From positions 1-64,000 of the IMG/VR virus record IMGVR_UViG_3300046808_001241: a DNA stretch of 64,000 nt; one strand, given 5' to 3'. A program made the translations under genes and the position numbers. Below, piece by piece: positions 1-15,978 of the stretch (positions are counted from its first letter, which is position 1; every line of letters starts with the position of its first letter). The notes under the pieces were generated by a model that saw nothing but the letters and a program-made list of their open reading frames with translations, was not told the DNA's origin and did not search any database.

Positions 1-223
1 AGAACAACCTCCTCTAATAGAAAGAATTGTATATGAAAGTAAATAGCCTAATCCTCCTAGCACTAATGCTTCCACTCGTTGGCTGTTCGACTGTTGATCA
101 AGCCAAGAAGGATTTCAAGAACTTTAAAGCCACTGTCCAATACAATGCAAAGGTCAAGCACTTTCCTGTAGTTGTTTTTAGGGATTGACCTGTCCAACCC
201 TCAACCCTATACTCAATACTGTT

Positions 224-403
224 ATGAATAAAACAACTACATACACAATCCAAGAACTTCTTAACAAGTACCCAGCTAATAAAGAGCTGAAAACTCTTGA
301 TTGGTCTAAGGATAAAGACGATCTTGAATTTGATATCAGTTCAATAATTGGTGGAGATTGGATTGTCGATCGTCAGAACAACACTGTCACAAATCTTCAT
401 TGA
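224..403 (+). CDS. early hypothetical protein
   Basis: ATG 39 nt after promoter 185; stop is the TGA of motif 400. Confidence 0.8.
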   Translation: MNKTTTYTIQELLNKYPANKELKTLDWSKDKDDLEFDISSIIGGDWIVDRQNNTVTNLH

Positions 404-435
404 CCTGTCCAACAACAATCTCTAGAATTAAAACC

Positions 436-618
436 ATGAAAGAACACGAACTTGTAAACTATTTGATTGAAGTCCTGGATTGGGCTTCGAATGAAGACAA
501 TATGGTCGTTGGTGTGGATACTTTTGAGAGTGCAGGACTTATGACTAACAACGAAGGTCTTGTAATCAAGATGAAGACTGGAGAAGTCTTTCAGCTGACG
601 GTCAAACAATCCCGTTGA
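436..618 (+). CDS. early hypothetical protein
   Basis: ATG after promoter 400; stop is the TGA of motif 615. Confidence 0.8.
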   Translation: MKEHELVNYLIEVLDWASNEDNMVVGVDTFESAGLMTNNEGLVIKMKTGEVFQLTVKQSR

Positions 619-652
619 CCTGTCCAACCCAAACTCCGATAGTAATACTGTT

Positions 653-913
653 ATGAACAACTACTACACTGACTACTCCAATATTGATCTCAACAGCGGA
701 TATCAAAAGGATTTGAACATCATTGATCCTCTTTCGTTTGCAGATCTTCTTTTAGAGATCAATTGCAACATTCCAAAGATCAACGAGCAGACCGTTCGTC
801 GTCAGTTCGAAGAAGATCTACAACGTACGATCGATTCTGCTCGAGAAGTCTTTGAAGCTAACTTGTCAAACATCGTCAAGCATGCAAACGACTATCGCAA
901 AGAATTAGTTTGA
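653..913 (+). CDS. early hypothetical protein
   Basis: ATG after promoter 615; stop is the TGA of motif 910. Confidence 0.8.
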   Translation: MNNYYTDYSNIDLNSGYQKDLNIIDPLSFADLLLEINCNIPKINEQTVRRQFEEDLQRTIDSAREVFEANLSNIVKHANDYRKELV

Positions 914-945
914 CCTGTCCAATCTAAATCTCTACAATCTTTCTC

Positions 946-1305
946 ATGATCAAATCGACACAAAAACACACAATTACCGTCAATGCAACAGATCTCAAAA
1001 AGAATCTGTGTGCTTCCTATCTGCAACTGCTTCAAGATGAACTGGATGCAAAGGAGATTGACTTCGAGTATTTCAAAATGGATCTCGATCGTTTCCAAGA
1101 CGAGCTGGATTCTGTTGTGAAGAGCGGGTTTGCACAATCGTTTCGCGACGGAAATACTATGATTTTATTGAACGGTGAAGACTTCGAATTCGTCGAGAAC
1201 TGGTTCGATAAGAACAAGAACCTCTCCGAAGAGCTTGTTGTGCGTATCCTCGATGATGAAGGTAATCAGATGGAAGTAGTTCAGCACGTTGATCTAAGCT
1301 ACTAA
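946..1305 (+). CDS. acidic early hypothetical protein
   Basis: 119 aa ORF after promoter 910. Confidence 0.8.
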   Translation: MIKSTQKHTITVNATDLKKNLCASYLQLLQDELDAKEIDFEYFKMDLDRFQDELDSVVKSGFAQSFRDGNTMILLNGEDFEFVENWFDKNKNLSEELVVRILDDEGNQMEVVQHVDLSY

Positions 1306-1319
1306 GAGGTTGGGTCGCT

Positions 1320-1361
1320 AAAAAAGGGGAGCTGGCAAGAATGCCTGGCGGCCAGCTCCCC
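1320..1361. terminator. GC-rich hairpin, probable terminator
   Basis: 11-bp stem GGGGAGCTGGC (1326-1336) / GCCAGCTCCCC (1351-1361); the A-tract before it gives a U-tract on the minus strand. Confidence 0.55.
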
Positions 1362-1418
1362 CCACGCGTGGGATTAATGTTGAGCAGTCCAGGCAAGTTG
1401 TTGAAGATTCTTTCTGTT

Positions 1419-2336
1419 ATGCAAGCTATTCAATCGAACAACACCACCAATAAAAACTTCACTCGTGTACGAGACGTTCAAGTTCCAGAGATCTTCTTTC
1501 GGAAGTTCAAGACTGGTATTGAAGATCTGGACGAAGCATTTGGTGGACAAGGATTTCTTCCTGGTTCTGTAATCACTCTTGCTGCTCCGGCTGGTGTTGG
1601 CAAGAGCTCGATTGCTTTGCAACTCCTTCAGTCATTGGAAGATATTGGTAAGAAGACTGCCTACATTTCTGGAGAAGAGACTTTGGAACAAGTTTCGTTT
1701 GCTGCTAAACGGTTGAGAGCTGAGTCTGTTCCTGTTGCCAATCTTGTTTATATTGAAGACATTGAAGAAGCTGTTGTTGAGTACGGCTTTAATTTTATTG
1801 TGTTGGATAGCTTTCCAACGATTGCAACTAAGCGGAAAGGAATGAGCTCCAGGGAGAAAGAAAGCTATGTTATTGGCAAGCTTGTTAATCTCGCAAAAGA
1901 ACGAGAGTGTTGCATGCTTATCATCCAACACTTTACGAAGAGTGGCAAATACAAAGGAGGTACGGAATTGATTCATGCTGCAGATGCTTTGTTCACTCTT
2001 GAGAAAAACCCTGACGATCACAATCTTAGAGATCTGATTTGTCACAAGAATCGTTTCGGTCAGTGCTCGTTCACTACCTTTCCTTTTGGGGCACAAGGAT
2101 ATACTTTCGAAGCCGTTGCTGCAGATAACAATCCAGAGCGCAAGTCTAGTGCAAAGAAAGAATCCAAAGCGGATCTCGTTCTTGACAGTCTTAGTGAACC
2201 AAAGAACGTTGCGCAAATTGTTCAAGAGACAGGCATTTCTGGACCATATCTTAACATGGTTCTTCGGCAGCTTGTTACAGAAGGCAAGATCAACAAAGAT
2301 GGTCGGGGAGCAGATGCACTGTACAAGAAGATCTGA
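1419..2336 (+). CDS. RadA/Sms-like RecA-fold ATPase with probable C-terminal winged helix
   Basis: TGIEDLDEAFGG, Walker A APAGVGKSS, Walker B IVLDS, ELIHAADA, KNRFG; start taken at the ATG after promoter variant 1380. Confidence 0.85.
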   Translation: MQAIQSNNTTNKNFTRVRDVQVPEIFFRKFKTGIEDLDEAFGGQGFLPGSVITLAAPAGVGKSSIALQLLQSLEDIGKKTAYISGEETLEQVSFAAKRLRAESVPVANLVYIEDIEEAVVEYGFNFIVLDSFPTIATKRKGMSSREKESYVIGKLVNLAKERECCMLIIQHFTKSGKYKGGTELIHAADALFTLEKNPDDHNLRDLICHKNRFGQCSFTTFPFGAQGYTFEAVAADNNPERKSSAKKESKADLVLDSLSEPKNVAQIVQETGISGPYLNMVLRQLVTEGKINKDGRGADALYKKI

Positions 2337-2357
2337 GTCGATATGCTCTTGAATCAT

Positions 2358-2391
2358 CAAAACGATTTTAAACGCATTCTAGAGCCAAGAA
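2358..2391 (+). repeat. 34-bp intergenic repeat, copy 1
   Basis: CAAAACGATTTTAAACGCATTCTAGAGCCAAGAA; matches 7281-7314 with 2 mismatches. Confidence 0.85.
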
Positions 2392-2478
2392 TCAGTGGAT
2401 ATGTGCACGGGCTCTGAAGCATTCTTTGAAAGATAATTGTTGAGCTGTCCAGGATCTGTCTCGAGAATAATAACTGTT

Positions 2479-2676
2479 ATGAACAACACCAATCACATCA
2501 TCAACGACTACTTGGAAGCACTAACCGAGCGAGCTGAAATGGCTGGAGACGATCGGTTAGCATATGCTATGGGCTTCCTGCTAGGATCCCTGAAGACTCT
2601 TGGCCTTCAAGGCTATGAGCTCGAAGTGCTTCAACGAGACACAGCTAACCTTCGCAACCTCATTGCTGGAAAGTAA
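2479..2676 (+). CDS. early hypothetical protein
   Basis: ATG 39 nt after promoter 2440. Confidence 0.75.
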   Translation: MNNTNHIINDYLEALTERAEMAGDDRLAYAMGFLLGSLKTLGLQGYELEVLQRDTANLRNLIAGK

Positions 2677-2679
2677 TTT

Positions 2680-2949
2680 ATGACCACTCAACAAAACACT
2701 ATCAACCTTGTTCGATCGATCATGCGAGCAGGCGGCAAGACTCAAGTCTGGAACAACAAGTACGAAGACGGAGTCCGTACAGTGAAGTGCTACAGGGACA
2801 AAGACACATGCAAGGACTTACAACTCAAGGACATCATTGTTCAGACTCTTGGAGACTTGCACATTGATCATAAGATCAATTTCACATTGCCTTCAGGTGG
2901 TCCTTTCAATCCAGGCACGGGAGGATTTATTGTCAGGCTTCCTGCTTGA
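2680..2949 (+). CDS. early hypothetical protein
   Basis: 89 aa; stop is the TGA of motif 2946. Confidence 0.75.
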   Translation: MTTQQNTINLVRSIMRAGGKTQVWNNKYEDGVRTVKCYRDKDTCKDLQLKDIIVQTLGDLHIDHKINFTLPSGGPFNPGTGGFIVRLPA

Positions 2950-2990
2950 CCTGTCCGAGATCTGTCCCGAGAATAATAACTGTTATGAAC
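2946..2990 (+). repeat. 45-bp exact direct repeat (promoter plus start codon), also at 3239-3283
   Basis: TTGACCTGTCCGAGATCTGTCCCGAGAATAATAACTGTTATGAAC is identical at both sites; a near copy lies at 2440. Confidence 0.9.
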
Positions 2991-3242
2991 GACTCCAAAT
3001 CACTAATCCAAGAAGGCAAAGAACTCGAACAAGAGCTGAAGGCTCTGCACAAGAGGCTCAAGGCTGAGACTAAAGAGCTGAAGAAGAGGTACAGGGCACA
3101 CGTTAAGAGTGTCGACAAGTTCTGTGACAAGAACCAAGAGGATACAGATCTCTGTCTCAAAGTAGGAGCTCCTTTCGATCGTTGTGAGAGTGCTCTTTAT
3201 TACATCCCAGAAGTCTTCGAAGGCTGGAATAGTTTTAATTGA
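2985..3242 (+). CDS. early coiled-coil hypothetical protein
   Basis: after promoter 2946; stop in motif 3239. Confidence 0.75.
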   Translation: MNDSKSLIQEGKELEQELKALHKRLKAETKELKKRYRAHVKSVDKFCDKNQEDTDLCLKVGAPFDRCESALYYIPEVFEGWNSFN

Positions 3243-3277
3243 CCTGTCCGAGATCTGTCCCGAGAATAATAACTGTT

Positions 3278-3475
3278 ATGAACAACACTACCAAATTAGT
3301 CAAAATCCTCGAAGACGCTGGCAAATCGACCCACTACATCATTGGGAATTTGCAAGCAGTTCTGCAACTTCTCGAACGGGAATCTCCTGCTAATGCTAAG
3401 ATCCTCCAAGACTCTGTGAAGTATGCAGAGCAACTAATTCAAATGAACAAAGAAGAAGAAGCTAAACTCAAATGA
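3278..3475 (+). CDS. early hypothetical protein
   Basis: after promoter 3239. Confidence 0.75.
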   Translation: MNNTTKLVKILEDAGKSTHYIIGNLQAVLQLLERESPANAKILQDSVKYAEQLIQMNKEEEAKLK

Positions 3476-3618
3476 AAAAACTGATCCTATTAACACTCCT
3501 CATCAGCTCTGCAACGGGATGCTCTACAGTAAAGCAAGCCCAGGCAGACTTCAGACACTTCCAAAATACAATCAAGTATCACCACAGCCAACCAGTAGTC
3601 CGCAACATTTACTTCTAA
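3472..3618 (+). CDS. small lipoprotein (48 aa, not in ORF track)
   Basis: MKKLILLTLLISSATGC signal with lipobox-like Cys; ATGA overlap with the upstream stop. Confidence 0.7.
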   Translation: MKKLILLTLLISSATGCSTVKQAQADFRHFQNTIKYHHSQPVVRNIYF

Positions 3619-3619
3619 A

Positions 3620-3766
3620 ATGAAACAATACATCAACACCATCCTGTCATTCCTGTTCCCATTCCAAGAACTTAACAGCAAGGTTTCCGTCCTATCAGAA
3701 CAAAGTTGGCTAGAGAAGATTATGACATCTCCTCAAGTTAAAGACTATCTGTGGACTGCTAAATGA
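3620..3766 (+). CDS. small hypothetical protein (48 aa)
   Basis: ATG directly after the previous stop, ends just before a tRNA. Confidence 0.5.
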   Translation: MKQYINTILSFLFPFQELNSKVSVLSEQSWLEKIMTSPQVKDYLWTAK

Positions 3767-3773
3767 TTTTTAA

Positions 3774-3846
3774 GGGCTTGTAGCTCAAAGGTTAGAGCGT
3801 GTTTCTCATAAAAACTTGGTTGGGGGTTCGAATCCCTCCAGGCCCA
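3774..3846 (+). tRNA. tRNA with CAT anticodon (Met or Ile2)
   Basis: GGGCTTG/CAGGCCC acceptor stem, CTCATAA anticodon loop, TTCGAAT T-loop; CCA not encoded. Confidence 0.85.
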
Positions 3847-3851
3847 TTAAC

Positions 3852-3937
3852 TTCATAACACGTCTGATGCGTACGGAACGCATCTTTTCATAACAAAAGA
3901 GAAGAGCTGCTGGATCTAGACTGGCAGCTCTTTTTCT
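3852..3937 (+). terminator. TTCATAACA - hairpin - TTTTCATAACA - terminator hairpin
   Basis: GATGCGT/ACGCATC stem (3866-3884), then GAAGAGCTGC/GCAGCTCTTT followed by a T tract. Confidence 0.75.
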
Positions 3938-3977
3938 TGTTGTCTTGTCCTCAGCTCTTCTCGAAGGTATTTGCATT

Positions 3978-4217
3978 ATGAAAAAGATCTACAAATACAA
4001 AAACCTCGGATATGCTCTTGCAGTCTTCTTCTATGTGGATCTGTCTGTGGCAGCCTTTGCGTACGTTGGCAAAGATGTTGTCAGAGACTATCAACTCAAA
4101 CGGGATGCAGAGAACATTCTGAACACTCCAGATCTCACTACTGGATTGGAAGAGCTTGAGCATGCCGTGCAGATGGACCTTGCCGACCTGGAGAAGACCT
4201 TCCAAAAGAATTCTTGA
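3978..4217 (+). CDS. early membrane-anchored hypothetical protein
   Basis: one hydrophobic segment; follows promoter variant 3940. Confidence 0.7.
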   Translation: MKKIYKYKNLGYALAVFFYVDLSVAAFAYVGKDVVRDYQLKRDAENILNTPDLTTGLEELEHAVQMDLADLEKTFQKNS

Positions 4218-4252
4218 TCTGTCCTAAAAGAATCCTGAATATAAAGACTGTT

Positions 4253-4468
4253 ATGGAAATCAAAAATCAAAGCCAGCTCCGAGAATTCTTTTGGGATGTT
4301 ATGTATCCTCGTTATACGCCAAAGAGGTTTTCCTCTTCTAAAAAATTCTATAGACAGAACGACTATTGTGCAGAGGTTCGAATGAACTGGGTTGACTTTG
4401 TCGATGTAATGCAACGAGAGGGACGAATCTCTGACAATCTAGCTCACACTGCTACTCTTCGAGCTTGA
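4253..4468 (+). CDS. early hypothetical protein
   Basis: after promoter 4214; stop in motif 4465. Confidence 0.75.
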   Translation: MEIKNQSQLREFFWDVMYPRYTPKRFSSSKKFYRQNDYCAEVRMNWVDFVDVMQREGRISDNLAHTATLRA

Positions 4469-4503
4469 CCTGTCCACCAACACTCTCTAAGATTATTACC
4501 GTT

Positions 4504-4707
4504 ATGAATACAACAACCCAACAATTCAATCGATCGTTTGTAGACAAGCTGAAAGGAAAAGGCTCGAAGTGGCTTACAGAGAGCATCCAAGTCGAAGAGC
4601 GCATGCTTAAGTTCTGCCCAGAGAGCGAACTTCCCAAGTACGAGCTTTACATTCAGGTCATGAAAAAAGCTCTCAATGAGCTTGACCTGTCCACAGCTGC
4701 TGCCTAA
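4504..4707 (+). CDS. early hypothetical protein
   Basis: after promoter 4465. Confidence 0.75.
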   Translation: MNTTTQQFNRSFVDKLKGKGSKWLTESIQVEERMLKFCPESELPKYELYIQVMKKALNELDLSTAAA

Positions 4708-4717
4708 GATTATCAAC

Positions 4718-4879
4718 ATGGACAAAGAAGTAAATCAAGCAGACTATCTTTTGCACGACTTGATTATCCCTACTGTTAATGAACACTTCAATGAAGACGA
4801 TCACTACGGAGTGTCTCGAATTGAAGACGATCGCAAAGAAGAAGATAGTCAACAAATGAACTTTTGGGGGAAGTGGTAG
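4718..4879 (+). CDS. early hypothetical protein
   Basis: after promoter 4682. Confidence 0.65.
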   Translation: MDKEVNQADYLLHDLIIPTVNEHFNEDDHYGVSRIEDDRKEEDSQQMNFWGKW

Positions 4880-4880
4880 A

Positions 4881-5078
4881 GTGAAAGTTACCAGGAAGTC
4901 TTTGCTGACTGGTAGGCTGAATACCTTGGAGCTTGATATCACTCCGCAAGAAATGGAATGGTTCGAGCAAGGGGAAGCAAAGATCCAAGAGCTCTGGCCC
5001 CATCTTACTCCCGAACAACACGACTTTATTAAGACAGGTATAACAGAACAAGAAATCAATGAAAGGATTAAACAATAA
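4881..5078 (+). CDS. small phage hypothetical protein
   Basis: GTG start, tightly packed; RKSLLTG...FIKTGIT pattern resembles small phage proteins. Confidence 0.7.
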   Translation: MKVTRKSLLTGRLNTLELDITPQEMEWFEQGEAKIQELWPHLTPEQHDFIKTGITEQEINERIKQ

Positions 5079-5079
5079 C

Positions 5080-5274
5080 ATGACTGCACGAGACCATCAA
5101 TTTGAAGTAGGGACTTGCCTGGAAGAGATCAAGCAGTTCCAAGACCGAGTCCTGGATGTCTATGATCCCAAGGACCAGAAGAAGATTGCTTTGCTGAAGG
5201 AACTGGTCTCCTTGCAAGCAGAACTGGAAGAATTGGATAAAGAGTTCGAGAACTATATCAAAGAGAATTGTTGA
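5080..5274 (+). CDS. coiled-coil hypothetical protein
   Basis: stop is the TGA of motif 5271. Confidence 0.7.
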   Translation: MTARDHQFEVGTCLEEIKQFQDRVLDVYDPKDQKKIALLKELVSLQAELEELDKEFENYIKENC

Positions 5275-5305
5275 CCTCTCCAAAGAGATTGACGAAGGTT
5301 ATTAC

Positions 5306-5620
5306 ATGAACAAAATATCTTTGATCCTTCTGGCAGCAGTGGCGATGACTCTCCAGGCTTGTTCCACCGGTGGATCTTATCAAGTAGGTTACTCCCGTGG
5401 TTATGTAAACAACTATTCTCCAACACGTACCTATTACAATCCTTATAACTCTTACAATCCTTACCAAACCTATTCCGTTGGCCCTCAATACTATAAGACA
5501 CGCGTTCCTTACTTCGGCCAACAAGTTCGGAACTATACTGGAACCCCAATCGCGATGCCCTCTTATAGTCCTTGTGGACAGCAGAGGTCTTCAATGATCA
5601 TCCCCAACAGCTGGAACTAA
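5306..5620 (+). CDS. Tyr/Asn/Pro-rich lipoprotein
   Basis: MNKISLILLAAVAMTLQAC lipobox; YNPY repeats; own promoter at 5271. Confidence 0.75.
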   Translation: MNKISLILLAAVAMTLQACSTGGSYQVGYSRGYVNNYSPTRTYYNPYNSYNPYQTYSVGPQYYKTRVPYFGQQVRNYTGTPIAMPSYSPCGQQRSSMIIPNSWN

Positions 5621-10283: not shown

Positions 10284-10856
10284 ATGATTAAAACAGCTAA
10301 GAAGAAAAAAGCAGCGAAGGGCAAAGGGTTCAAGATTAAACCAATCCCGTTGAGTGAAGAGCAGATCACAATGTTTGTTAGTCATTATAAACAGTTTAAG
10401 TCTTTTCCTGGCTCAAAGATCCCTTGCACTATTACTGGAAAGCTAACTACTTGTGTAGGGCCTTGGATGCAGAAGAAGATCAAGGAGTTCGGTTCAGCGG
10501 AGTCCTTGTTGCGCAACTACCAATGCAGGGGAGCTCTTAAAGACCAAAGGATTAAAGCAAAGCCTCAGAAGGTTAAACGGAAGAGTAAAGTAAAGGATCT
10601 TATTGAAAAGGAAGAGGGTAAGTATAACATTCCTTCCATGGATAGTTTTGTAAAGCCCACACCATATGATCCCGCAAAAGAATCTGAGTCCGTCTGCTTG
10701 CGGCCCGATATCTTTCTGTCGAACGATCGGCATTGTGATGGATGTCACCACTTTAAGATCTGCCGCAGCCGTCTCAAGAATCTTCCAAAGCATGTTTCAT
10801 TTGATGGAAACAGCTTTGTGTACGATGAAGGTTACAAGACAAAGAAAAAGAAATGA
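10284..10856 (+). CDS. Lys-rich early protein with Cys/His cluster, possible nucleic-acid binder
   Basis: very basic; C-x9-H-C-x2-C-HH-x3-C; promoter at 10249. Confidence 0.75.
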   Translation: MIKTAKKKKAAKGKGFKIKPIPLSEEQITMFVSHYKQFKSFPGSKIPCTITGKLTTCVGPWMQKKIKEFGSAESLLRNYQCRGALKDQRIKAKPQKVKRKSKVKDLIEKEEGKYNIPSMDSFVKPTPYDPAKESESVCLRPDIFLSNDRHCDGCHHFKICRSRLKNLPKHVSFDGNSFVYDEGYKTKKKK

Positions 10857-10969
10857 TCTGGTACATCTATATAGCCTTCATGTCAATACTGATTACTGTC
10901 AACCTCTATGAGTGGTACAAAAAGGTAAAGTAGTTGACGTGTCCGAAGCCTTTCCGGAATATAGACAAC

Positions 10970-11482
10970 ATGACACAGAAGAAGATCTCAATGAATAGGC
11001 GGAAGCTTTCTTCGCCGTACTTCTCAATAAGAAAGGAGAAGGTCAAGTGGCCAACTATCCGCGGAGCATATATGACGGATAGCAATGTGCCTGTACTCAA
11101 AGACTTTGTAACGAAGAAGGGTCGTTCGATTATCTTTCTGGATGGGAAGTATGATACTACTCTGAATCGTTATAAGAATCTTCCATCCGAAGAGCGAGCG
11201 ATCGCTTGGGAGTTCATGTGCAGAGAGAATGGAGTCAAAGGAGGGATCTTCATGCTGTGCTGGCTTGGGAACTTCCACAATGGGTGCATCTTCCATGCCT
11301 CTCCTCAGTTCCCACAGATTCAATGCTGGTATGAACAGATGGGAGTAGAGAGGGCTAATGCGTTCTTCGAGAGGCAAGCATTCAAGATCTATAACGAAGT
11401 GGTAAAGATTGTACACAATGGTGGTTCGATTGTGGATAAAGAAGTGCAAGAGTTTATAACTAATGGCACCAACAAAGTTTAA
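10970..11482 (+). CDS. early hypothetical protein
   Basis: after promoter 10934. Confidence 0.75.
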   Translation: MTQKKISMNRRKLSSPYFSIRKEKVKWPTIRGAYMTDSNVPVLKDFVTKKGRSIIFLDGKYDTTLNRYKNLPSEERAIAWEFMCRENGVKGGIFMLCWLGNFHNGCIFHASPQFPQIQCWYEQMGVERANAFFERQAFKIYNEVVKIVHNGGSIVDKEVQEFITNGTNKV

Positions 11483-11483
11483 T

Positions 11484-11681
11484 ATGACAAAAGAACGACA
11501 AAAACAATTAGAAGATTGCGAGCTTATGCTAGGAAGGATTGCCAACCTGGTGCAAGAGTTCTGTGAAGAGGATGAGACTACCTTGCAAGGAGTTGCAAAG
11601 CTTGTTGCAACCTATAGAGATTATCAAGCACAAGAAGCTTGGGACTTTGTATACTCCTTGCATCTGAAGAAGAAGATATGA
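11484..11681 (+). CDS. hypothetical protein
   Basis: tightly packed ORF. Confidence 0.6.
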   Translation: MTKERQKQLEDCELMLGRIANLVQEFCEEDETTLQGVAKLVATYRDYQAQEAWDFVYSLHLKKKI

Positions 11682-11875
11682 AGATCGTAAAAGTCCCTAT
11701 AGAACTATCCTTGATGAGCTACTTTGATGAAGCACACAGTTCTCTTGTAATGGCTGCTGAGGTTGCTCATTTCGAAAAGCATCCAGAAGCTCAGAACATT
11801 TCTGAACTAATCGATACATTGGAAGAAATTATTCTAAAGGTTTGTGACGAGACATCTTTAACACAAAAAACATGA
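11678..11875 (+). CDS. hypothetical protein
   Basis: ATGA overlap. Confidence 0.6.
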   Translation: MKIVKVPIELSLMSYFDEAHSSLVMAAEVAHFEKHPEAQNISELIDTLEEIILKVCDETSLTQKT

Positions 11876-12054
11876 CAATGCCACTACACATTCAAAGGTC
11901 CCTTGTGACAGCTCTCTATACTACTATAAGTGTTTATTATCCGTTGCGAAATAAGCAGCTTGCGGCGCGCGAGTACGTTAAGCAATCTATTGAGGCTCTG
12001 AGGTATATTCAAATGAATACTCCGGGCGAGGACTGGATAGCGGTAATGATGTAG
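11872..12054 (+). CDS. hypothetical protein
   Basis: ATGA overlap. Confidence 0.55.
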   Translation: MTMPLHIQRSLVTALYTTISVYYPLRNKQLAAREYVKQSIEALRYIQMNTPGEDWIAVMM

Positions 12055-12078
12055 GGGAGTTGTAGTTTAAATAAGTTT

Positions 12079-12684
12079 ATGAAATTTGATGAGGCAATAG
12101 ACACCTATCTAGCTACATCATTCTTTGTGGAGAGTCCGATGTATTATGATGGGTTGTTTAATGAGCAGATGAATGACATTGAACACAATAAACAAATTGC
12201 TCAGAACATCATATCTAGCAACAAACCTTTTGATAGATTTGAAAGTTGGGTTGTATATAGAGTCGTTGATGGCTTTGATGAAGACATACGGACGTTTTGT
12301 TTAATTAAAGATGGGTTAGTTGATGCTTTTATGGAGATAGCAACTAGTAAAGACAACTACTTCAGCAGAGGAGTGTGGCAGAGAAACACGGCTGATAATA
12401 AAGGTTTAATTAGAAACTTTATTCTTAATTTTTTACCAAAGCACTATACTTCATTAATCTCCGACAAAACAGCTAACAAACTGGGCATTAAATTTTATAA
12501 AAAACTTCTAGATGTTTGCATACAAAAAGGATTAAAAGTGACCGTTCTTAAAGGATCTCTTAAAAACGAAATTCCTTATCATGCAAATCAGTTTGAAAGC
12601 TATTGGCACAATGTCAATAGAGATGTTCCTACGCATCCTACATTCGTAACAACAAAGGATGATTTGTTTAAGATTTATTTTTGA
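12079..12684 (+). CDS. ESP-family paralog 1 (possible GNAT-like fold)
   Basis: TAAATA at 12068; VESP, SDKTANKLGIKFYKKLL, FESYWH, LFKIYF match 61397 and 13782. Confidence 0.75.
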   Translation: MKFDEAIDTYLATSFFVESPMYYDGLFNEQMNDIEHNKQIAQNIISSNKPFDRFESWVVYRVVDGFDEDIRTFCLIKDGLVDAFMEIATSKDNYFSRGVWQRNTADNKGLIRNFILNFLPKHYTSLISDKTANKLGIKFYKKLLDVCIQKGLKVTVLKGSLKNEIPYHANQFESYWHNVNRDVPTHPTFVTTKDDLFKIYF

Positions 12685-12704
12685 AACGATAAATAACGGT
12701 TGTC

Positions 12705-13073
12705 ATGAAGGTCGTTAAGCTTTTATTGTTGTCTGTTGTTATAAGTGCTTGCACGAGCAATCCACCCACAAATGTTCCGGAATGGGTCGGTAAGATGAAG
12801 AATGCATGCTTGCCGGAAGCAATTGTAATGACACAAGGGTTGAAGGCTAGCGGTATACAAGCAAAGGTGTTGTCAATTCACACAAAAGATTGGGGACATG
12901 CTACATGTGTTTATATGTATCCTCCGGGCCGGAACAAATTGTGGGTATGGGATAGCCATTGGCAATCTGTTCCTCTGAGAGCTTTTTGGAATGATCCAAA
13001 CTCTGTTGCAAGAGCATGGATGAAATGGAGATATGACGAAACTCCGTTAACAAACGTTTACTTTCAAGAATAG
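12705..13073 (+). CDS. lipoprotein with putative Cys-His-Asp (papain/transglutaminase-like) triad
   Basis: lipobox ISAC; NACLP, WGHATC, VWDS; TAAATA at 12690. Confidence 0.65.
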   Translation: MKVVKLLLLSVVISACTSNPPTNVPEWVGKMKNACLPEAIVMTQGLKASGIQAKVLSIHTKDWGHATCVYMYPPGRNKLWVWDSHWQSVPLRAFWNDPNSVARAWMKWRYDETPLTNVYFQE

Positions 13074-13108
13074 TTGACATGTCCGATAAGGCAACTGACT
13101 ATTATTGA

Positions 13109-13291
13109 ATGAAGACAGACGAATATTTTGTAGAGACTGTTCCGTGCGTCCATGTAGGTGATGAGGAATGGATTCCTACAGATAAAGTTGAATTTGTAGA
13201 TATCTGTGAGGATTTCTGCGGTTATGATCTAATGACGTTTATTTATAAAGGCAAACAAATGCAATCTAAAATTACCACTAGGCCAGTATAA
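13109..13291 (+). CDS. early hypothetical protein
   Basis: ATG 35 nt after promoter 13074. Confidence 0.75.
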   Translation: MKTDEYFVETVPCVHVGDEEWIPTDKVEFVDICEDFCGYDLMTFIYKGKQMQSKITTRPV

Positions 13292-13503
13292 TGGACACGT
13301 ACGTCAAGCTTATTCCAAATGCTGAGGTAAAAGGCTTTATAAAACAAGCGCAAACCGCTGGAAGAGACATTGAAGTAAGTGCTGCAGATACGTTTTTTAT
13401 ACGAGACAAAAAGACTAATGCGATGATTCTCAAAGGTATGAGAATTAGACAAGACTTATGGGGATTGACATTCACTAAAACATATTATCCAGAACCAACA
13501 TAA
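13291..13503 (+). CDS. hypothetical protein, distant paralog of 7513
   Basis: RD..T, GM, W..F..Y.EP pattern shared. Confidence 0.7.
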   Translation: MDTYVKLIPNAEVKGFIKQAQTAGRDIEVSAADTFFIRDKKTNAMILKGMRIRQDLWGLTFTKTYYPEPT

Positions 13504-13508
13504 TTTAT

Positions 13509-13766
13509 ATGGACGACATTCACATTATTGAACAGAAGGACCGAGTTGTTATTCAATCTTATTTTAAACTCAGACACAATCATAACAACTATACGTTTGT
13601 TGATTATATTTACGAAGATAGTGGAGAGCCGCTCGAGTGTGGGGAGTTCAACTCAATCTTCAATATTAGCGGCAAGCTGGTGGATAACGAAGAACTTAAG
13701 GATACAATTGGTCAGTTTTGTAATCTGGTACGGACTTGTAGAAAGGTTGTGGTAGTTGATAAATAA
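13509..13766 (+). CDS. hypothetical protein
   Basis: 85 aa ORF. Confidence 0.65.
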   Translation: MDDIHIIEQKDRVVIQSYFKLRHNHNNYTFVDYIYEDSGEPLECGEFNSIFNISGKLVDNEELKDTIGQFCNLVRTCRKVVVVDK

Positions 13767-13781
13767 CTTCTCTGAGAAGAA

Positions 13782-14369
13782 ATGACTTTAAAATTTGAAA
13801 AGTTTCTAAATTACTATAACAGACACGAAAGAATTCTAAATGAATCTCCGGTTAGATTAGGAAGACAATACAGCGAAGAGTTAGACAACAACTGGTTTAA
13901 TGTTGAAACGGCTAAGGAAACTTTAGAAGATTCCTCGTTTGAGAAAGTTCTTTCGAAAGAAGTATTTGACGTTAATTTAAACTTATTTAGAGATGTTTAC
14001 GAAGAAGATAAGTTTCAAGATTATTGGATGACTGATCAGCCGTTTATAAGTTGTTATTTTCTTTTTCAAAAGTCTGGAAAAGGTTTACAATCACTGAGAG
14101 TTTGGAACCATAAAGCATTTAAAGGAACTGCAAAAGATTTGTTTTTTTCTTATTATTTGCAAAATTTTGATTTTATTATAAGTGATAACAAACATTCTGA
14201 TCAAGGAGAATCATACTGGAAGAAGATTGTTAAAATTGCTCGAACTAACGGAAACGCAGTTACAGTTATTGCCAGAGACGGAATCGAAAGCGATCTAAAA
14301 AATTTAGATGGTCTTTGGGGAAGTTCTGAAGAGTTCTCAAAATTTAGAATTAAAGTTTTTAAAAGATAA
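13782..14369 (+). CDS. ESP-family paralog 2 (possible GNAT-like fold)
   Basis: TAAATA at 13760; LNESP, SDNKHSDQGESYWKKIV. Confidence 0.75.
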   Translation: MTLKFEKFLNYYNRHERILNESPVRLGRQYSEELDNNWFNVETAKETLEDSSFEKVLSKEVFDVNLNLFRDVYEEDKFQDYWMTDQPFISCYFLFQKSGKGLQSLRVWNHKAFKGTAKDLFFSYYLQNFDFIISDNKHSDQGESYWKKIVKIARTNGNAVTVIARDGIESDLKNLDGLWGSSEEFSKFRIKVFKR

Positions 14370-14377
14370 ATAACTTC

Positions 14378-14668
14378 ATGAAATCCAAAGACCAACAACT
14401 CCTAGAAGAAGCTTATACTAAAATCAACGAACAAGAAGAGCAAGGCTTTAGTTACTACTCCGGTCCCTCGGAAGATGTAATGTTCTTAGAAGATTTGGAT
14501 GTAGACAACTTTAAAAGAAAAGTTCAAGAGGGACAGCACTTTAAAACAGCTTATGTTGCTCATAAAGCTGATGCTGTGAACTACGGATATCCGGACGAAG
14601 GAGCTCATGAGTTTTATGTTTTTTACGACAAACAAGACTTTGCTCATCCTGCGTTGATTCCTGTCTAA
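14378..14668 (+). CDS. putative late internal head protein
   Basis: TAAATA at 14367; MKSKDQQLLEEAY. Confidence 0.7.
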   Translation: MKSKDQQLLEEAYTKINEQEEQGFSYYSGPSEDVMFLEDLDVDNFKRKVQEGQHFKTAYVAHKADAVNYGYPDEGAHEFYVFYDKQDFAHPALIPV

Positions 14669-14702
14669 CGAATATTTTCCCGTCGGGAGAATAAGTAATT
14701 AA

Positions 14703-15005
14703 ATGAAGAAACAAATTACTCTTAAGCAGGCACATGACTTGCTTCAAATATCACCAGTTATCGGTTTAGAAGGTAGATATATTGTTCCTTCATTGTTTGA
14801 GTTAGAAGGAGAAGAGGGATCTGAATTCTGTGTATTGTACTGGACGGAGATTTATAAAGAAGATCCTGTCGATTTTACAGTCGTGTTTGAAGAGGGAGAT
14901 AACAAAAAATGCGAACTTGATGGTTGTGAGCTTGTGCTCGTAAACAACGAAGGAGAAGAAGAAGTTCTTCAATTATTAGTTCCTCATTATCCTGAATTTG
15001 ATTAA
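14703..15005 (+). CDS. acidic hypothetical protein
   Basis: 100 aa ORF. Confidence 0.65.
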   Translation: MKKQITLKQAHDLLQISPVIGLEGRYIVPSLFELEGEEGSEFCVLYWTEIYKEDPVDFTVVFEEGDNKKCELDGCELVLVNNEGEEEVLQLLVPHYPEFD

Positions 15006-15013
15006 ATAATTTT

Positions 15014-15106
15014 ATGACAGGATTTCTAATCCTACACGGCGCAGTGACATTGGTTTGTTTTATTATTGCAATTATAGGAATTAGAGAAGATATAAAAAGA
15101 CGTTGA
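15014..15106 (+). CDS. 30-aa hydrophobic peptide
   Basis: TAAATA at 15003; single TM; stop is the TGA of motif 15103. Confidence 0.45.
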   Translation: MTGFLILHGAVTLVCFIIAIIGIREDIKRR

Positions 15107-15137
15107 CCTACCCAAACAACGATAGGATTATGTCTTA

Positions 15138-15455
15138 ATGACCGCTGCTAAAACCTACGCTGTTAATTCTAATTCAACTTCTATTAACGGAACTCAATAT
15201 TTGGGTTATGTAACCATCACTTACGACGAGCTCGTAAAAACGCTTGGCCAACCAAAGGAAGGCAGTGCTGATGGAAAAACTACATGCGAATGGCATGTAG
15301 AATTCGAAGATGGGTCAGTAGCTACAGTGTATGACTGGAAGGTTGGATATACGCCTAAAAATTTGCATGATTGGCATGTCGGAGGAAGGTCAGGGATTGC
15401 TCTCGATTATCTAGAAGAAGTTTTAGAAAAACAAATCACTCGTTCAAAATACTAA
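15138..15455 (+). CDS. phage hypothetical protein
   Basis: GKTTCEW...ATVYDWK pattern; promoter at 15103. Confidence 0.8.
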   Translation: MTAAKTYAVNSNSTSINGTQYLGYVTITYDELVKTLGQPKEGSADGKTTCEWHVEFEDGSVATVYDWKVGYTPKNLHDWHVGGRSGIALDYLEEVLEKQITRSKY

Positions 15456-15461
15456 TTTATT

Positions 15462-15752
15462 ATGACTCAACACACTACTATTAATGATTTAGTTTCAGCG
15501 ACAAAACGGAAAATCAGCGACATAAACAGCATTGTTGATGTATTGCTTTCTGGATATCGTACAGCTTCAGAATTGCTAGATGATCAAATTGATCACAGAA
15601 AGACATACGTCGACCAGTTACAAGAATTAAACAAAGAGCTCTCAGCAATTACTGATGGTCACCCAGCGCTTAAAACAGAAAAACTTGCTCAAGACGTTTT
15701 TGCTAGTTTGGTTAATATAGCATGCGGTGACAGCTTTTCAGCTAAAATATAA
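15462..15752 (+). CDS. coiled-coil hypothetical protein
   Basis: 96 aa ORF. Confidence 0.65.
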   Translation: MTQHTTINDLVSATKRKISDINSIVDVLLSGYRTASELLDDQIDHRKTYVDQLQELNKELSAITDGHPALKTEKLAQDVFASLVNIACGDSFSAKI

Positions 15753-15762
15753 AACACTGATA

Positions 15763-15942
15763 ATGAAGGGATATTGGGATCATAAAACAAAGCCTTCTAC
15801 GTTTGTTGTTGTAAAAGATGGACAGGAAATTTATAGAGGACCGTTTGAAGGTGGATATAAATTAATTTCTCTTAACAGGTGTTATAAAACAGAGGTAGCA
15901 AAATATTTCAAGGAGCCTGAATGTCTCACTCCTAAAAAATAA
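15763..15942 (+). CDS. hypothetical protein
   Basis: ends just before promoter 15944. Confidence 0.55.
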   Translation: MKGYWDHKTKPSTFVVVKDGQEIYRGPFEGGYKLISLNRCYKTEVAKYFKEPECLTPKK

Positions 15943-15978
15943 GTTGTCTTGTCCGTTTACAGAATGGACTATAGTTCT

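What the first reader, a model, noticed from the sequence alone, without database searches (positions are those of the whole stretch)
185..15954. Promoter-gene cassette array whose repeated motif also supplies the upstream stop codon
Seen: 25 copies of TTGACNTGTCC in 16 kb (28 in the window), nearly one per gene. In at least 11 cases the TGA of TTGA is the stop codon of the previous ORF (motifs at 400, 615, 910, 2946, 3239, 4214, 4465, 5271, 5787, 7934, 15103). Conservation runs 5 nt beyond the -35 hexamer and forms a GAC-N-N-GTC dyad, a perfect GACATGTC at 6316 and 13074. Established: some T4-type phages have early promoter/stem-loop (PeSL) repeats that allow gene cassettes to be shuffled by recombination. 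Inference: each unit is a self-expressing cassette exchanged through the repeated motif, an integron-like host-takeover module. The TGTCC extension may also bind an activator (MotA-box analogue) or recombinase.
Basis: partly seen in the sequence, partly recalled or inferred. Interest (0 to 1): 0.85.

Follow-up and report, generated by a model that had tools for sequence, protein, structure and literature searches.

The report
Shuffled array of leaderless early-gene cassettes
A large uncultivated T4-like phage carries about 25 tiny genes, each with its own near-identical promoter placed directly against the start codon; related phages have reshuffled these genes at the promoters, a new variant of a gene-shuffling mechanism already known in T4-type phages.

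Summary
TTGACNTGTCC occurs 18 times exactly and 28 times with at most one mismatch, all on the + strand (0.07 expected by chance). In 11 units the TGA inside TTGA ends the upstream ORF.

Each motif is the -35 box of a sigma70-type promoter: a 17-nt spacer, then a -10 of the form (T/G)AnnnT. The mRNAs must therefore be leaderless or carry about 3 nt of leader, with no room for a Shine-Dalgarno site.

The window is the start of a circular 217-kb genome of a distant T4-like phage. More than 120 metagenome stretches carry the same architecture (620 unique promoters). Cassette order there is scrambled: neighbours are conserved in 7.6% of comparisons, against 61% in the replication module. 79% of homology breakpoints fall inside the promoter, and leader variants are homogenised within genomes.

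So shuffling of self-expressing cassettes at the repeat is supported. It resembles the known PeSL system of T4-type phages, but 95% of units lack the stem-loop and none has a Shine-Dalgarno site. No integrase, attC-like hairpin, MotA or AsiA was found, and the proposed dyad is not conserved.

TGTCC is as conserved as TTGAC, and its function is unexplained. This is a new variant of a known kind.

The parts
1..16341 (+). Early-gene cassette array: 49 small + strand ORFs, median 75 aa. 24 abut a promoter, 16 are coupled to the upstream stop (gap of 10 nt or less), 8 are other. The dense array begins within the last 3 kb of the circular contig (promoters at L215 11545 and 14122, about 2.8 kb and 0.2 kb before window position 1).
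185..226 (+). Promoter unit: TTGACCTGTCC, 17-nt spacer, TATACT, 10 nt, ATG 224. Its TGA ends ORF 33-188.
400..438 (+). Promoter unit: -10 TAGAAT, 7 nt, ATG 436. Its TGA ends ORF 224-403.
615..655 (+). Promoter unit: -10 GATAGT, 9 nt, ATG 653. Its TGA ends ORF 436-618.
910..948 (+). Promoter unit: -10 TACAAT, 7 nt, ATG 946. Its TGA ends ORF 653-913.
1380..1421 (+). Doubtful degenerate copy (TTGAGCAGTCC) inside the KaiC/RecA-like ATPase ORF 1341-2336. That ORF has a GGGGAG sequence 9 nt upstream of its own ATG at 1341.
2440..2481 (+). Promoter unit (TTGAGCTGTCC): -10 GAGAAT, 10 nt, ATG 2479.
2946..2987 (+). Promoter unit: -10 GAGAAT, 10 nt, ATG 2985. Its TGA ends ORF 2680-2949. It is 47/48 identical to the unit at 3239 although the downstream proteins are unrelated.
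3239..3280 (+). Promoter unit: -10 GAGAAT, 10 nt, ATG 3278. Its TGA ends ORF 2985-3242.
3774..3846 (+). tRNA-Met embedded in the array.
3899..3935 (+). Hairpin plus T-run terminator directly upstream of the promoter at 3940 (a PeSL-like composite).
3940..3980 (+). Promoter unit (TTGTCTTGTCC): -10 GAAGGT, 9 nt, ATG 3978.
4214..4255 (+). Promoter unit (TTGATCTGTCC): 10 nt, ATG 4253. Its TGA ends ORF 3978-4217.
4465..4506 (+). Promoter unit: 10 nt, ATG 4504. Its TGA ends ORF 4253-4468.
4682..4720 (+). Promoter unit: -10 TAAGAT, 7 nt, ATG 4718.
5271..5308 (+). Promoter unit (TTGACCTCTCC): 6 nt, ATG 5306. Its TGA ends ORF 5059-5274.
5787..5828 (+). Promoter unit: 10 nt, ATG 5826. Its TGA ends ORF 5629-5790.
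6273..6308 (+). Terminator hairpin directly upstream of the promoter at 6316.
6316..6354 (+). Promoter unit (TTGACATGTCC): 7 nt, ATG 6352, driving a 288-aa ORFan. The stretch from about 6204 to 7298 is absent from relative L108.
7235..7268 (+). Terminator hairpin after the 288-aa gene.
7474..7515 (+). Promoter unit: -10 GACTAT, 10 nt, ATG 7513.
7934..7975 (+). Promoter unit: -10 GACAAT, 10 nt, ATG 7973. Its TGA ends ORF 7764-7937.
8646..8671 (+). Terminator hairpin directly upstream of the promoter at 8679.
8679..8716 (+). Promoter unit (TTGACCTGTCT): 6 nt, ATG 8714.
9167..9205 (+). Promoter unit: 7 nt, ATG 9203. The upstream open frame (64-aa GTG-start ORF 8972-9166; no ATG-start gene called) ends with a TAG that directly abuts TTGA.
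9685..9726 (+). Promoter unit: 10 nt, ATG 9724. The upstream ORF 9435-9698 reads through the -35 box and stops just after TGTCC.
10249..10286 (+). Promoter unit (TTGACTTGTCC): -10 TAATAT, 6 nt, ATG 10284.
10934..10972 (+). Promoter unit (TTGACGTGTCC): 7 nt, ATG 10970.
13074..13111 (+). Promoter unit (TTGACATGTCC): 6 nt, ATG 13109. The upstream ORF's TAG directly abuts TTGA.
15103..15140 (+). Degenerate promoter unit (TTGACCTACCC): -10 GATTAT, 6 nt, ATG 15138.
15944..15981 (+). Promoter unit (TTGTCTTGTCC): -10 GACTAT, 6 nt, ATG 15979. This is the last unit of the dense array.
18932..18942 (+). Outlying copy of the box (TTGACTTGTCC) with -10 TATATT. No convincing abutting gene.
22421..22460 (+). 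Outlying promoter unit (TTGACTAGTCC): 8 nt, ATG 22458 (112 aa).
26926..26970 (+). Box (TGGACTTGTCC) plus TAGTAT read by eye in the flank printed (the scripted 17-nt -10 call was TATCTT), upstream of tRNA-Arg 26971-27047. The -35 box is used here without any ATG.
32131..32184 (+). Outlying box (TTGCCTTGTCC) with a 22-nt distance from -10 to ATG.
33708..33736 (+). Outlying box (TTGACTTGACC) with -10 TATAAT and no abutting gene (first ATG 33 nt after the -10, opening an 8-codon ORF).

Best explanation
This is the early hyperplastic region of a distant T4-like phage, built from single-gene transcription units. Each unit starts with an 11-bp -35 box (TTGAcnTGTCC), followed by a 17-nt spacer and a -10 of the form (T/G)AnnnT. 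A purine lies 7-8 nt after the -10. That purine is either the A of the ATG (a true leaderless mRNA) or the G of GT(T/A)ATG (a 3-nt leader).

Inferred steps: host sigma70-type RNA polymerase fires all units at once after infection, and ribosomes start on the 5'-terminal AUG without a Shine-Dalgarno site. That would explain why nearly every gene needs its own promoter. Genes without a promoter sit within 10 nt of the upstream stop and would be translated by coupling.

Coding sequence runs right up to the next promoter, so the invariant TGA inside TTGA often becomes the stop codon. This also keeps each cassette translationally closed whatever lies downstream.

The two conserved blocks (the -35 box and the -10/leader/ATGAA block) are repeated about 25 times per genome. 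They act as short homology patches for the phage's own recombination machinery (UvsX-like, Rad50/Mre11-like). The result is deletion, insertion, replacement and reordering of promoter-gene cassettes within and between related phages. This is the PeSL principle without the stem-loop and without the Shine-Dalgarno site.

Shown here: the anatomy, its conservation in more than 600 promoters, scrambled gene order, breakpoints in the promoters, and concerted evolution of the leader. Inferred: transcription start sites, leaderless translation, early timing and the recombination pathway. What reads TGTCC is unknown.
For: Motif statistics and strand bias.

Promoter geometry: a 17-nt spacer and an ATG 5-10 nt after the -10 in all 25 window units. 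The same holds in 620 unique units from relatives, with distances of 10 nt (430), 7 (68), 9 (58) and 6 (36). A purine sits at the expected start position in every class.

Gene starts: 24 of 48 array genes abut a promoter and 16 are coupled.

Phage identity: T4-like, with family B DNA polymerase, Rad50-like and Mre11-type metallophosphatase proteins, UvsX-like RecA, DnaB-like helicase, primase and ligase. The genome is a circular 217-kb contig.

Distribution: the same architecture occurs in more than 120 metagenome stretches, with 675 units on the array strand and 43 on the other. There is one chance-level hit in 185,579 bacterial species genomes.

Constraint on the box: in a set free of search bias, TGTCC carries 1.5-1.9 bits per position against 0.9-2.0 for TTGAC, while the adjacent spacer carries 0.1-0.4 bits, rising to 0.6-0.9 in the three positions before the -10.

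Shuffling: most window cassettes have homologues elsewhere, in a different order. Neighbour conservation is 16/211 in the array against 297/484 in the polymerase module.

Breakpoints: 160 of 202 unique breakpoints between contigs at least 95% identical lie within -20 to +60 of the -35 start, against 16% of the sequence. Breakpoints per junction are 0.39 at promoters, 0.06 at tight promoterless junctions and 0.13 at other gaps. One gene head is joined to four different upstream contexts exactly at the -10/leader. Three contexts of one gene head are each backed by 2-3 separate contigs, which for the loci whose source was displayed come from different assemblies or samples. For the window itself, HSP ends against L210 and L108 fall at the ATG (+36), at +48 to +60, or at +10 of promoters.

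Concerted evolution: 23 of 35 loci are at least 85% pure for GTT-ATG or GTA-ATG, a purity reached by none of 2000 shuffles. Promoters 2946 and 3239 are 47/48 identical in front of unrelated genes.

Precedent: PeSL crossovers mapped between the -10 and the ATG, and T4 recombination needs under 50 bp of homology (PMC2839356; PMC4122927).
Against: There are no RNA data, so start sites, timing and leaderless translation are inferred from geometry alone. The host is unknown.

Shine-Dalgarno sites are rare across the whole window (6 of 58 genes). Their absence in the array is therefore not special; only the missing leader is.

The 3-nt-leader class (about 79% of units) may not behave as strictly leaderless.

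Breakpoints at promoters are partly expected because only intergenic joints survive selection. In addition, alignments extend into conserved blocks, so exact crossover points are not resolved.

At family level even coupled pairs are often separated: by my tally of the per-gene counts, about 9 of 70 coupled neighbours are conserved, so rearrangement does not strictly need a promoter.

Related loci were found through the motif itself, and most are short metagenome contigs, so some joints could be assembly chimeras.

This model gives no reason why TGTCC should be as conserved as the -35 hexamer.
Confidence: 0.7

Rival explanations
1. The box, and especially the TGTCC extension or the GAC-NN-GTC dyad, is the target of a dedicated protein that catalyses site-specific cassette exchange in an integron-like way, with circular intermediates.
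For: TGTCC is as constrained as the -35 hexamer while the spacer next to it is free. Breakpoints cluster at the element. PeSL mini-circles exist in RB49 and phi1 (PMC2839356).
Against: No integrase, recombinase or transposase domain was found in the 50 array proteins, the 53 other window proteins or 10 upstream proteins. The other roughly 140 kb of the genome was not seen.

Breakpoints fall in two separate blocks, with alignment ends clustering near 0 and near +20 to +35 on one side, and near +10-15 and +40-55 on the other. They are not at one fixed position.

The dyad's first arm is not conserved. Only about 5% of units have any hairpin nearby.
Confidence: 0.1
2. The 11-bp box is a composite promoter element read by sigma region 4 together with a second factor. 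That factor could be a MotA-like activator acting through sigma appropriation, a virion-delivered protein, or a host-specific feature of the primary sigma. In this reading the box defines a private temporal promoter class, and shuffling is a by-product.
For: The geometry matches a T4 MotA-dependent promoter: the box ends 12 nt before the -10 (Mot-box description in PMC4122927). TGTCC is strongly constrained. The same box precedes a tRNA gene with no ATG (26926). The full box-leader-ATG composite is absent from bacterial genomes apart from one chance-level hit; the box on its own was not scanned.
Against: TTGA is nearly invariant, so ordinary -35 recognition is retained, unlike at MotA promoters. 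No MotA or AsiA domain was found in the window. The position and gene content (ORFans at the head of a rightward transcription region) fit immediate-early genes, which must fire before phage proteins exist.
Confidence: 0.2
3. The box doubles as an operator for a phage repressor that shuts early transcription off. This would be analogous to the asymmetric, one-orientation 'stoperator' sites of mycobacteriophage L5, which overlap -35 elements and stop codons. That comparison is from my own memory and was not checked here.
For: The sites are asymmetric, number about 25-28, all lie in one orientation, and overlap both the -35 and stop codons.
Against: Every site has a correctly spaced -10 and an abutting ATG, so promoter function alone explains the placement. 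No helix-turn-helix repressor was identified. Nothing here tests binding.
Confidence: 0.1
4. The apparent shuffling is an artefact. In this reading, short-read assemblers mis-join contigs at the repeated promoters, and the arrays are really collinear.
For: The repeats are 11-48 nt long. Large contigs end inside the array (window start, L083, L099/L166).
Against: Identical junctions recur in separate contigs, which for the loci whose source was displayed come from different assemblies or samples (ENA, JGI, Logan). One gene head has three alternative contexts, each seen in 2-3 contigs. The window contig closes into a circle across the array. Order is also scrambled at the protein-family level between diverged phages.
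Confidence: 0.05

Closest known systems
PeSL (promoter-early stem-loop) cassettes of T4-type phages (Arbiol et al. 2010, PMC2839356; Comeau et al. 2014, PMC4122927)
   Same: Both have near-consensus sigma70-type early promoters with a 17-nt spacer, repeated between small ORFan genes in a hyperplastic region of a T4-like genome. In both, indels, replacements and displacements are bounded by the element, with crossovers between the -35/-10 and the ATG. Both fit recombination on short homology.
   Different: About 95% of units here have no stem-loop terminator (33 of 610 have one; 3 in the window by the criterion). No unit has a Shine-Dalgarno site, and the ATG follows the -10 by 5-10 nt. The -35 is an 11-bp box with an invariant TGTCC extension. 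The upstream ORF ends inside or against the -35 box. The density and degree of order scrambling are far higher than described for RB49/phi1, T4/PST or KVP40/nt-1.
T4 MotA-dependent middle promoters and the PmSL variant in nt-1
   Same: A box of 9-11 bp centred near -30 ends about 12 nt before a sigma70 -10 element.
   Different: The sequence is different (TGCTT Mot box). MotA promoters lack a -35 TTGAC, whereas here TTGA is nearly invariant. No MotA or AsiA was detected in the window.
Integron gene-cassette arrays
   Same: Arrays of small, mostly unknown genes, all in one orientation, whose content and order vary between relatives.
   Different: Integrons need an IntI tyrosine recombinase and attI/attC sites that fold into hairpins, and their cassettes are promoterless and expressed from one Pc promoter. 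None of this applies here, since every cassette has its own promoter.
Leaderless genes of Actinobacteria, Deinococcus-Thermus and archaea, and the lambda cI mRNA from PRM
   Same: A -10 TAnnnT lies 6-8 nt upstream of the start codon, so transcription and translation would start at the same nucleotide, with no Shine-Dalgarno site.
   Different: Here the arrangement is applied systematically to a phage early-gene array with a strongly conserved -35 box. Most units keep a conserved 3-nt GT(T/A) leader. No such arrangement was found for a T4-like phage in the literature searches.
Stoperators of mycobacteriophage L5-type phages (from my own memory, not checked here)
   Same: Many copies of an asymmetric site of about 13 bp containing TTGAC-like bases, in one orientation, often overlapping stop codons.
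   Different: Those are repressor-binding sites of temperate phages scattered through the genome and not tied to a -10 plus ATG. Here every site is part of a complete promoter.

Membership tests
PeSL (promoter-early stem-loop) element | Sigma70-like early promoter, -35 / about 17 nt / -10 | tested here: met
   All 25 window units have a 17-nt spacer and a nAnnnT -10; so do 620 unique units in relatives.
PeSL (promoter-early stem-loop) element | Stem-loop terminator immediately upstream of the promoter | tested here: not met
   Only 33 of 610 units have a T-run plus hairpin of -8 kcal/mol or better. In the window these are 3940, 6316 and 8679.
PeSL (promoter-early stem-loop) element | Shine-Dalgarno sequence and start codon at the 3' end of the element | tested here: not met
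   The ATG lies 5-10 nt after the -10, leaving no room for a Shine-Dalgarno site.
PeSL (promoter-early stem-loop) element | Located in a hyperplastic region of a T4-like genome, flanking ORFans | tested here: met
   T4-like replication genes are present. 49 of 50 array proteins have no Pfam family at E<=0.001 (two more have only weak hits at E 0.004-0.005). Neighbour conservation is 7.6% against 61% in the core module.
PeSL (promoter-early stem-loop) element | Indel and replacement breakpoints between relatives lie in the element | tested here: met
   160 of 202 breakpoints lie in promoter windows. Rates per junction are 0.39 at promoters against 0.06 and 0.13 elsewhere. Window compared with L210 and L108.
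PeSL (promoter-early stem-loop) element | Excised mini-circles formed by recombination between flanking elements | not testable with these tools
   This needs inverse PCR or long reads on infected cells or virions.
Integron | IntI-type tyrosine recombinase gene next to the array | tested here: not met
   No integrase or recombinase Pfam or PHROG hit was found in the array, the rest of the window, or the 14 kb upstream. The rest of the genome was not seen.
Integron | attC imperfect inverted repeats at cassette ends | tested here: not met
   The only symmetry is the 3-nt GAC/GTC arms, which are not conserved in relatives. Hairpins are rare.
Integron | Promoterless cassettes expressed from a common Pc promoter | tested here: not met
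   24 of 48 genes have their own abutting promoter.
T4 MotA-dependent middle promoter | Mot box (TGCTT core) replacing the -35 | tested here: not met
   The box is TTGAcnTGTCC, with TTGA 91-99% conserved.
T4 MotA-dependent middle promoter | Box positioned about 12 nt upstream of a sigma70 -10 | tested here: met
   There are 12 nt between TGTCC and the -10 in units with a 17-nt spacer. The Mot-box layout is described in PMC4122927; the 12 +/- 1 figure is from my own knowledge.
T4 MotA-dependent middle promoter | motA and asiA genes in the phage | tested here: inconclusive
   None was found among 103 window proteins. About 140 kb of the genome was not examined.
Leaderless mRNA genes | Transcription start 0-5 nt from the start codon | not testable with these tools
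   This is inferred only from the fixed -10 to ATG distance and a purine 7-8 nt after the -10. It needs 5'-end mapping.
Leaderless mRNA genes | No Shine-Dalgarno sequence upstream of the start codon | tested here: met
   Only the promoter itself lies upstream of the ATG.
T4-like phage (Straboviridae/Kyanoviridae-type core) | gp43-type family B polymerase, gp41-type helicase, UvsX, gp46/47-type nuclease and primase in one module | tested here: met
   Pfam hits. The polymerase is 31-33% identical to those of cyanomyophages and pelagimyophages. The clade is a distant one.

The most novel reading that the evidence does not exclude
The 11-bp TTGAcnTGTCC box is not just a strong -35. It is read jointly by sigma and a dedicated factor, either phage-delivered or specific to the unknown host. 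Together with the obligate 5'-terminal AUG it would define a private expression code for a phage clade. Any gene that recombines into the box-leader frame would be switched on at once in both transcription and translation, making the array a purpose-built acquisition platform for host-takeover genes.
Probability: 0.2. Interest if true: 0.8.

Novelty: new variant of a known kind. Interest (0 to 1): 0.6.

Why it matters
Promoter-mediated modular shuffling (PeSL) has rested on a few pairs of cultured T4-type phages. Here the same principle appears in an uncultivated clade found in many metagenomes. With hundreds of promoter copies and dozens of natural junction variants, the process can be measured at population scale.

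The anatomy is also more minimal. The promoter is fused directly to the start codon and the previous stop codon sits inside the -35, so the smallest exchangeable unit carries its own transcription start, translation start and translation stop.

If leaderless expression is confirmed, this would be, as far as my searches show, the first T4-like phage whose early programme is built on leaderless mRNAs. That would also be a strong clue to the biology of its unknown host.

The unexplained conservation of TGTCC is a concrete target for finding a new promoter-recognition determinant.

Tried and rejected
- **Similarity to known phages:** megablast of the array and of 24-48 kb against 50,697 phage records found nothing useful, only tRNA matches.
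- **A wasted scan:** the first viral-contig pattern scan used the wrong gap length (N24-27 instead of N23) and found nothing.
- **Protein-seeded searches:** The search for related loci with the KaiC-like ATPase and with the 288-aa ORFan returned only the window's own contig. An exact-protein look-up of window gene 7513-7761 gave only one short collinear contig.
- **Bacterial genomes:** the scan for the promoter-leader composite gave one chance-level hit, so there is no host clue.
- **Literature:** a search for the motif string found only unrelated primer sequences. Searches for leaderless early genes in T4-like phages found no precedent.
- **Dyad hypothesis:** rejected, because the first-arm base varies in relatives.
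- **Integron reading:** rejected on the missing integrase, missing attC and the per-cassette promoters.
- **Simple tandem duplication:** rejected as the source of the repeats, because spacers are variable and downstream proteins are unrelated while the box is invariant.
- **Host assignment:** Bacteroidota was considered because Shine-Dalgarno sites are rare, but the promoter is not of the TTTG / TAnnTTTG type (that consensus is from my own knowledge). Actinobacteria and SAR11/LD12 were also considered. The host is left open.

Full report

Yes. TTGACNTGTCC matches 18 times exactly, always on the + strand, against 0.07 expected from dinucleotide shuffles. With at most one mismatch there are 28 + strand copies and one - strand copy. 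Twenty-three of them lie between 185 and 15954.

The TGA inside TTGA closes an ATG-started ORF of 51-89 aa at 185, 400, 615, 910, 2946, 3239, 4214, 4465, 5271, 5787 and 7934. The site at 15103 closes only a 30-codon ORF, and 185 was missed. GACATGTC at 6316 and 13074 is correct.

**2. Anatomy**

Every copy is followed, after a 17-nt spacer counted from TTGACC, by a -10 hexamer of the form (T/G)AnnnT.

There are two classes.
- In the 6/7-nt class, the A of the ATG sits where transcription should start.
- In the 9/10-nt class, a conserved CTGT(T/A)ATGAA places a G at that position and leaves a 3-nt leader.

There is no room for a Shine-Dalgarno site.

Of 48 array genes, 24 abut a promoter in this way. 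Sixteen start within 10 nt of the upstream stop, often as ATGA overlaps, and so look translationally coupled. Eight are other cases.

Only three or four units have a terminator hairpin just upstream: 3899-3935, 6273-6308 and 8646-8671, plus 7235-7268 after the largest ORFan.

The proteins are small, with a median of 75 aa. 49 of 50 have no Pfam family at E<=0.001. The exception is a KaiC/RecA-like ATPase. Several have lipobox-like or membrane-like N-termini.

**3. Context**

The window is the first 64 kb of IMGVR_UViG_3300046808_001241, a 217,182-bp contig. The contig closes into a circle through a 127-nt terminal repeat. The dense array starts within the last 3 kb of the contig and runs to about 16.3 kb of the window.

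Downstream lie a tRNA cluster, a tmRNA and a T4-type replication and recombination module. That module holds a family B polymerase, Rad50-like and Mre11-type metallophosphatase proteins, a UvsX-like RecA, a DnaB-like helicase, a primase and a ligase. The polymerase is only 31-33% identical to those of cyanomyophages and pelagimyophages. This is a distant T4-like lineage, and no close cultured relative was found.

**4. Relatives**

A pattern scan for the box plus leader found one further viral contig carrying an array and one carrying a single cassette promoter. It found one chance-level hit in 185,579 bacterial species genomes.

In 416 kb of these loci there are 675 complete units on the array strand and 43 on the other. 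They give 620 unique promoters.

I built a logo anchored only on the leader and excluded every unit that had satisfied the search pattern. In that logo TGTCC carries 1.5-1.9 bits per position. TTGAC carries 0.9-2.0 bits, and the adjacent spacer only 0.1-0.4, rising to 0.6-0.9 in the three positions before the -10. The extension is therefore under its own constraint and is not a relic of recent duplication.

The fifth base of the box varies, so the GAC/GTC dyad is not conserved.

**5. Test of the cassette-shuffling idea**

*Gene order.* Most window cassettes have protein homologues in other loci, but in different orders. L181, for example, reads W15, W24, W34, W13, W43, W21, W32, W7. L210 is nearly collinear apart from replacements. 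A window gene's downstream neighbour is conserved in 16 of 211 comparisons (7.6%, median anchor identity 58%). In the polymerase module the figure is 297 of 484 (61%, median identity 50%), and 78% among closer relatives.

*Breakpoints.* Among contig pairs at least 95% identical, 160 of 202 unique internal homology breakpoints lie within -20 to +60 of a -35 start. Only 16% of the sequence lies in such windows.

Breakpoints per junction are 0.39 for promoter junctions, 0.06 for tight promoterless junctions and 0.13 for other gaps. The effect is therefore more than a preference for intergenic DNA in general.

*Concrete cases.* One 82-aa gene is joined to four different upstream contexts, and identity begins exactly at the -10/leader. 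A relative lacks one cassette through a promoter-to-promoter deletion. Another deletion left a 6-codon scar.

For the window itself, alignments with L210 begin at the ATG or end at +48 to +60 of promoters. The alignment with L108 ends at +10 of promoter 7934. The stretch from about 6204 to 7298, which carries promoter 6316, the 288-aa gene and both flanking terminators, is present in the window and absent in L108.

*Concerted evolution.* The leader variant (GTT-ATG or GTA-ATG) is homogeneous within loci: 23 of 35 loci are at least 85% pure, a purity reached by none of 2000 shuffles. The gene families are nevertheless shared between the two types of loci. This points to gene conversion among promoter copies, or to genes adopting the resident promoter when they move.

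Inside the window, promoters 2946 and 3239 are 47/48 identical in front of unrelated proteins.

*Assembly chimeras* are unlikely to explain this. Identical junctions recur in separate contigs, which for the loci whose source was displayed come from different assemblies or samples. One gene head has three alternative contexts, each seen in 2-3 contigs.

**6. The stop codon in the motif**

Across relatives, 420 promoters have an identifiable upstream ORF end. In 168 of them the stop is the TGA of TTGA. In 65 the stop directly abuts TTGA. In 50 it lies further inside the promoter.

Among ORFs that reach the box, 77% are in the TGA frame, against 33% expected from random frames.

I read this as compaction, with an invariant TGA acting as a backstop. 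It brings a useful consequence: a crossover downstream of the -35 never changes the upstream protein. This reading is inference.

**7. Mechanism proposed**

On infection, host sigma70-type RNA polymerase would fire about 25-28 near-identical promoters. Each makes a monocistronic or short mRNA that begins at or 3 nt before the AUG. Ribosomes would start on the 5'-terminal AUG, and promoterless genes would be translated by coupling.

The one-promoter-per-gene layout then follows from leaderless translation.

The repeated -35 box and -10/leader/ATGAA block provide 11-48 nt homology patches. The phage encodes UvsX-like and Rad50/Mre11-like proteins. According to the PeSL papers, T4-type recombination needs under 50 bp of homology, and their crossovers mapped between the -10 and the ATG.

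The anatomy and the comparative pattern are shown here. Start sites, timing, leaderless translation and the recombination pathway are inferred.

**8. Comparison with known systems**

The closest known system is the PeSL of T4-type phages (PMC2839356, PMC4122927).

Shared features:
- a consensus early promoter repeated between ORFans in a hyperplastic region;
- breakpoints inside the element.

Defining features that are not met:
- the stem-loop terminator is absent from about 95% of units;
- the Shine-Dalgarno site is absent from all.

Features that are new here: the 11-bp box, the ATG abutting the promoter and the stop codon overlapping the -35.

It is not an integron. There is no integrase in what I could examine and no attC, and each cassette has its own promoter.

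It is not a MotA-type promoter, because TTGA is retained, the Mot box is absent and no MotA or AsiA was found in the window. The distance from box to -10 is the same, however, so a second reader of TGTCC remains possible.

**9. Limits**

- There are no RNA data and the host is unknown.
- Shine-Dalgarno sites are rare across the whole window (6 of 58 genes).
- Relatives were found through the motif itself, and most are short contigs.
- Exact crossover points cannot be resolved inside identical blocks.
- Coupled pairs are also often separated at family level: by my tally of the per-gene counts, about 9 of 70 coupled neighbours are conserved.
- About 140 kb of the genome was not examined.

**10. 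Verdict**

The feature is real and statistically overwhelming. The integron, dyad and recombinase elements of the interpretation are not.

The thing is best described as a PeSL-like system with no stem-loop and no leader, in a widespread uncultivated T4-like clade. It is a new variant of a known kind, with one unexplained element: the constraint on TGTCC.

Noticed in passing
window 24603-25036, and 25054-27047: The phage encodes a tmRNA (Rfam RF00023, 125.7 bits). ARAGORN predicts an unusually long tag peptide ending in YELAA. It is followed by a cluster of 10 tRNA genes.
   Followed up: partly
window 1-11500 compared with 16000-64000: The first 11.5 kb of the array is much richer in G+C than the rest: 41-45% against 32-36% overall, and GC3 48% against 28% in replication genes. 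Early cassettes may be tuned to host tRNAs before the phage tRNAs appear, or they may circulate among phages of different base composition.
   Followed up: partly
window 16500-64000: Shine-Dalgarno-like sequences are rare before genes across the whole window (6 of 58). Upstream regions are A/T-rich, and second codons are mostly AAx. This suggests a host that makes little use of Shine-Dalgarno sites. The host was not identified.
   Followed up: partly
window 1-127 = L215 14351-14477: The 217-kb contig has a 127-nt direct terminal repeat, so the genome assembles as a circle, and the assembler's cut lies inside the array. Two other large contigs (94 kb and 157 kb) also end inside their arrays.
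   Followed up: yes
window 3885-3907, 7220-7242, 8632-8640; also L094 near 240: The sequence TTTCATAAC(A) precedes several terminator hairpins. It is the reverse complement of the leader-start motif (T)GTTATGAAA. No minus-strand promoter or convincing minus-strand gene goes with it. Unexplained.
   Followed up: partly
window 2358-2391 and 7281-7314: A 34-nt direct repeat, 94% identical, lies just downstream of the two largest genes of the array (the KaiC-like ATPase and the 288-aa ORFan). Its function is unknown.
   Followed up: no
window 33-188, 3472-3618, 5306-5620, 12705-13073: Four small array proteins start with a hydrophobic stretch followed by a lipobox-like Cys (LVGCS, ATGCS, LQACS, ISACT), as in small lipoproteins. 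The first two are paralogues. Several other cassettes encode small membrane proteins.
   Followed up: partly
L082 5440-6156 (IMGVR_UViG_3300011336_000270, 52 kb): This contig has 45% G+C and carries its own DnaB-like helicase, a glycosyltransferase and a dCMP deaminase. It also carries one promoter almost identical to window 2946/3239, plus a second cassette with the same leader. It shows almost no other similarity to the window. This may be cassette transfer between lineages.
   Followed up: partly
window 26926-27047: A copy of the -35 box (TGGACTTGTCC), with TAGTAT read by eye as its -10, lies just upstream of tRNA-Arg. The box is therefore also used where no protein start follows.
   Followed up: no
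window 19632-19706: ARAGORN reports a tRNA-like gene with a four-base anticodon (gacg). It did not reach the Rfam tRNA gathering score.
   Followed up: no
L085 3870-3903 compared with L087 838-1120: In L085 a cassette present in L087 has been deleted. Its promoter and a 6-codon remnant ORF (MNTNTH*) remain in front of the next gene. The joint lies at a short ACCAAC microhomology.
   Followed up: partly
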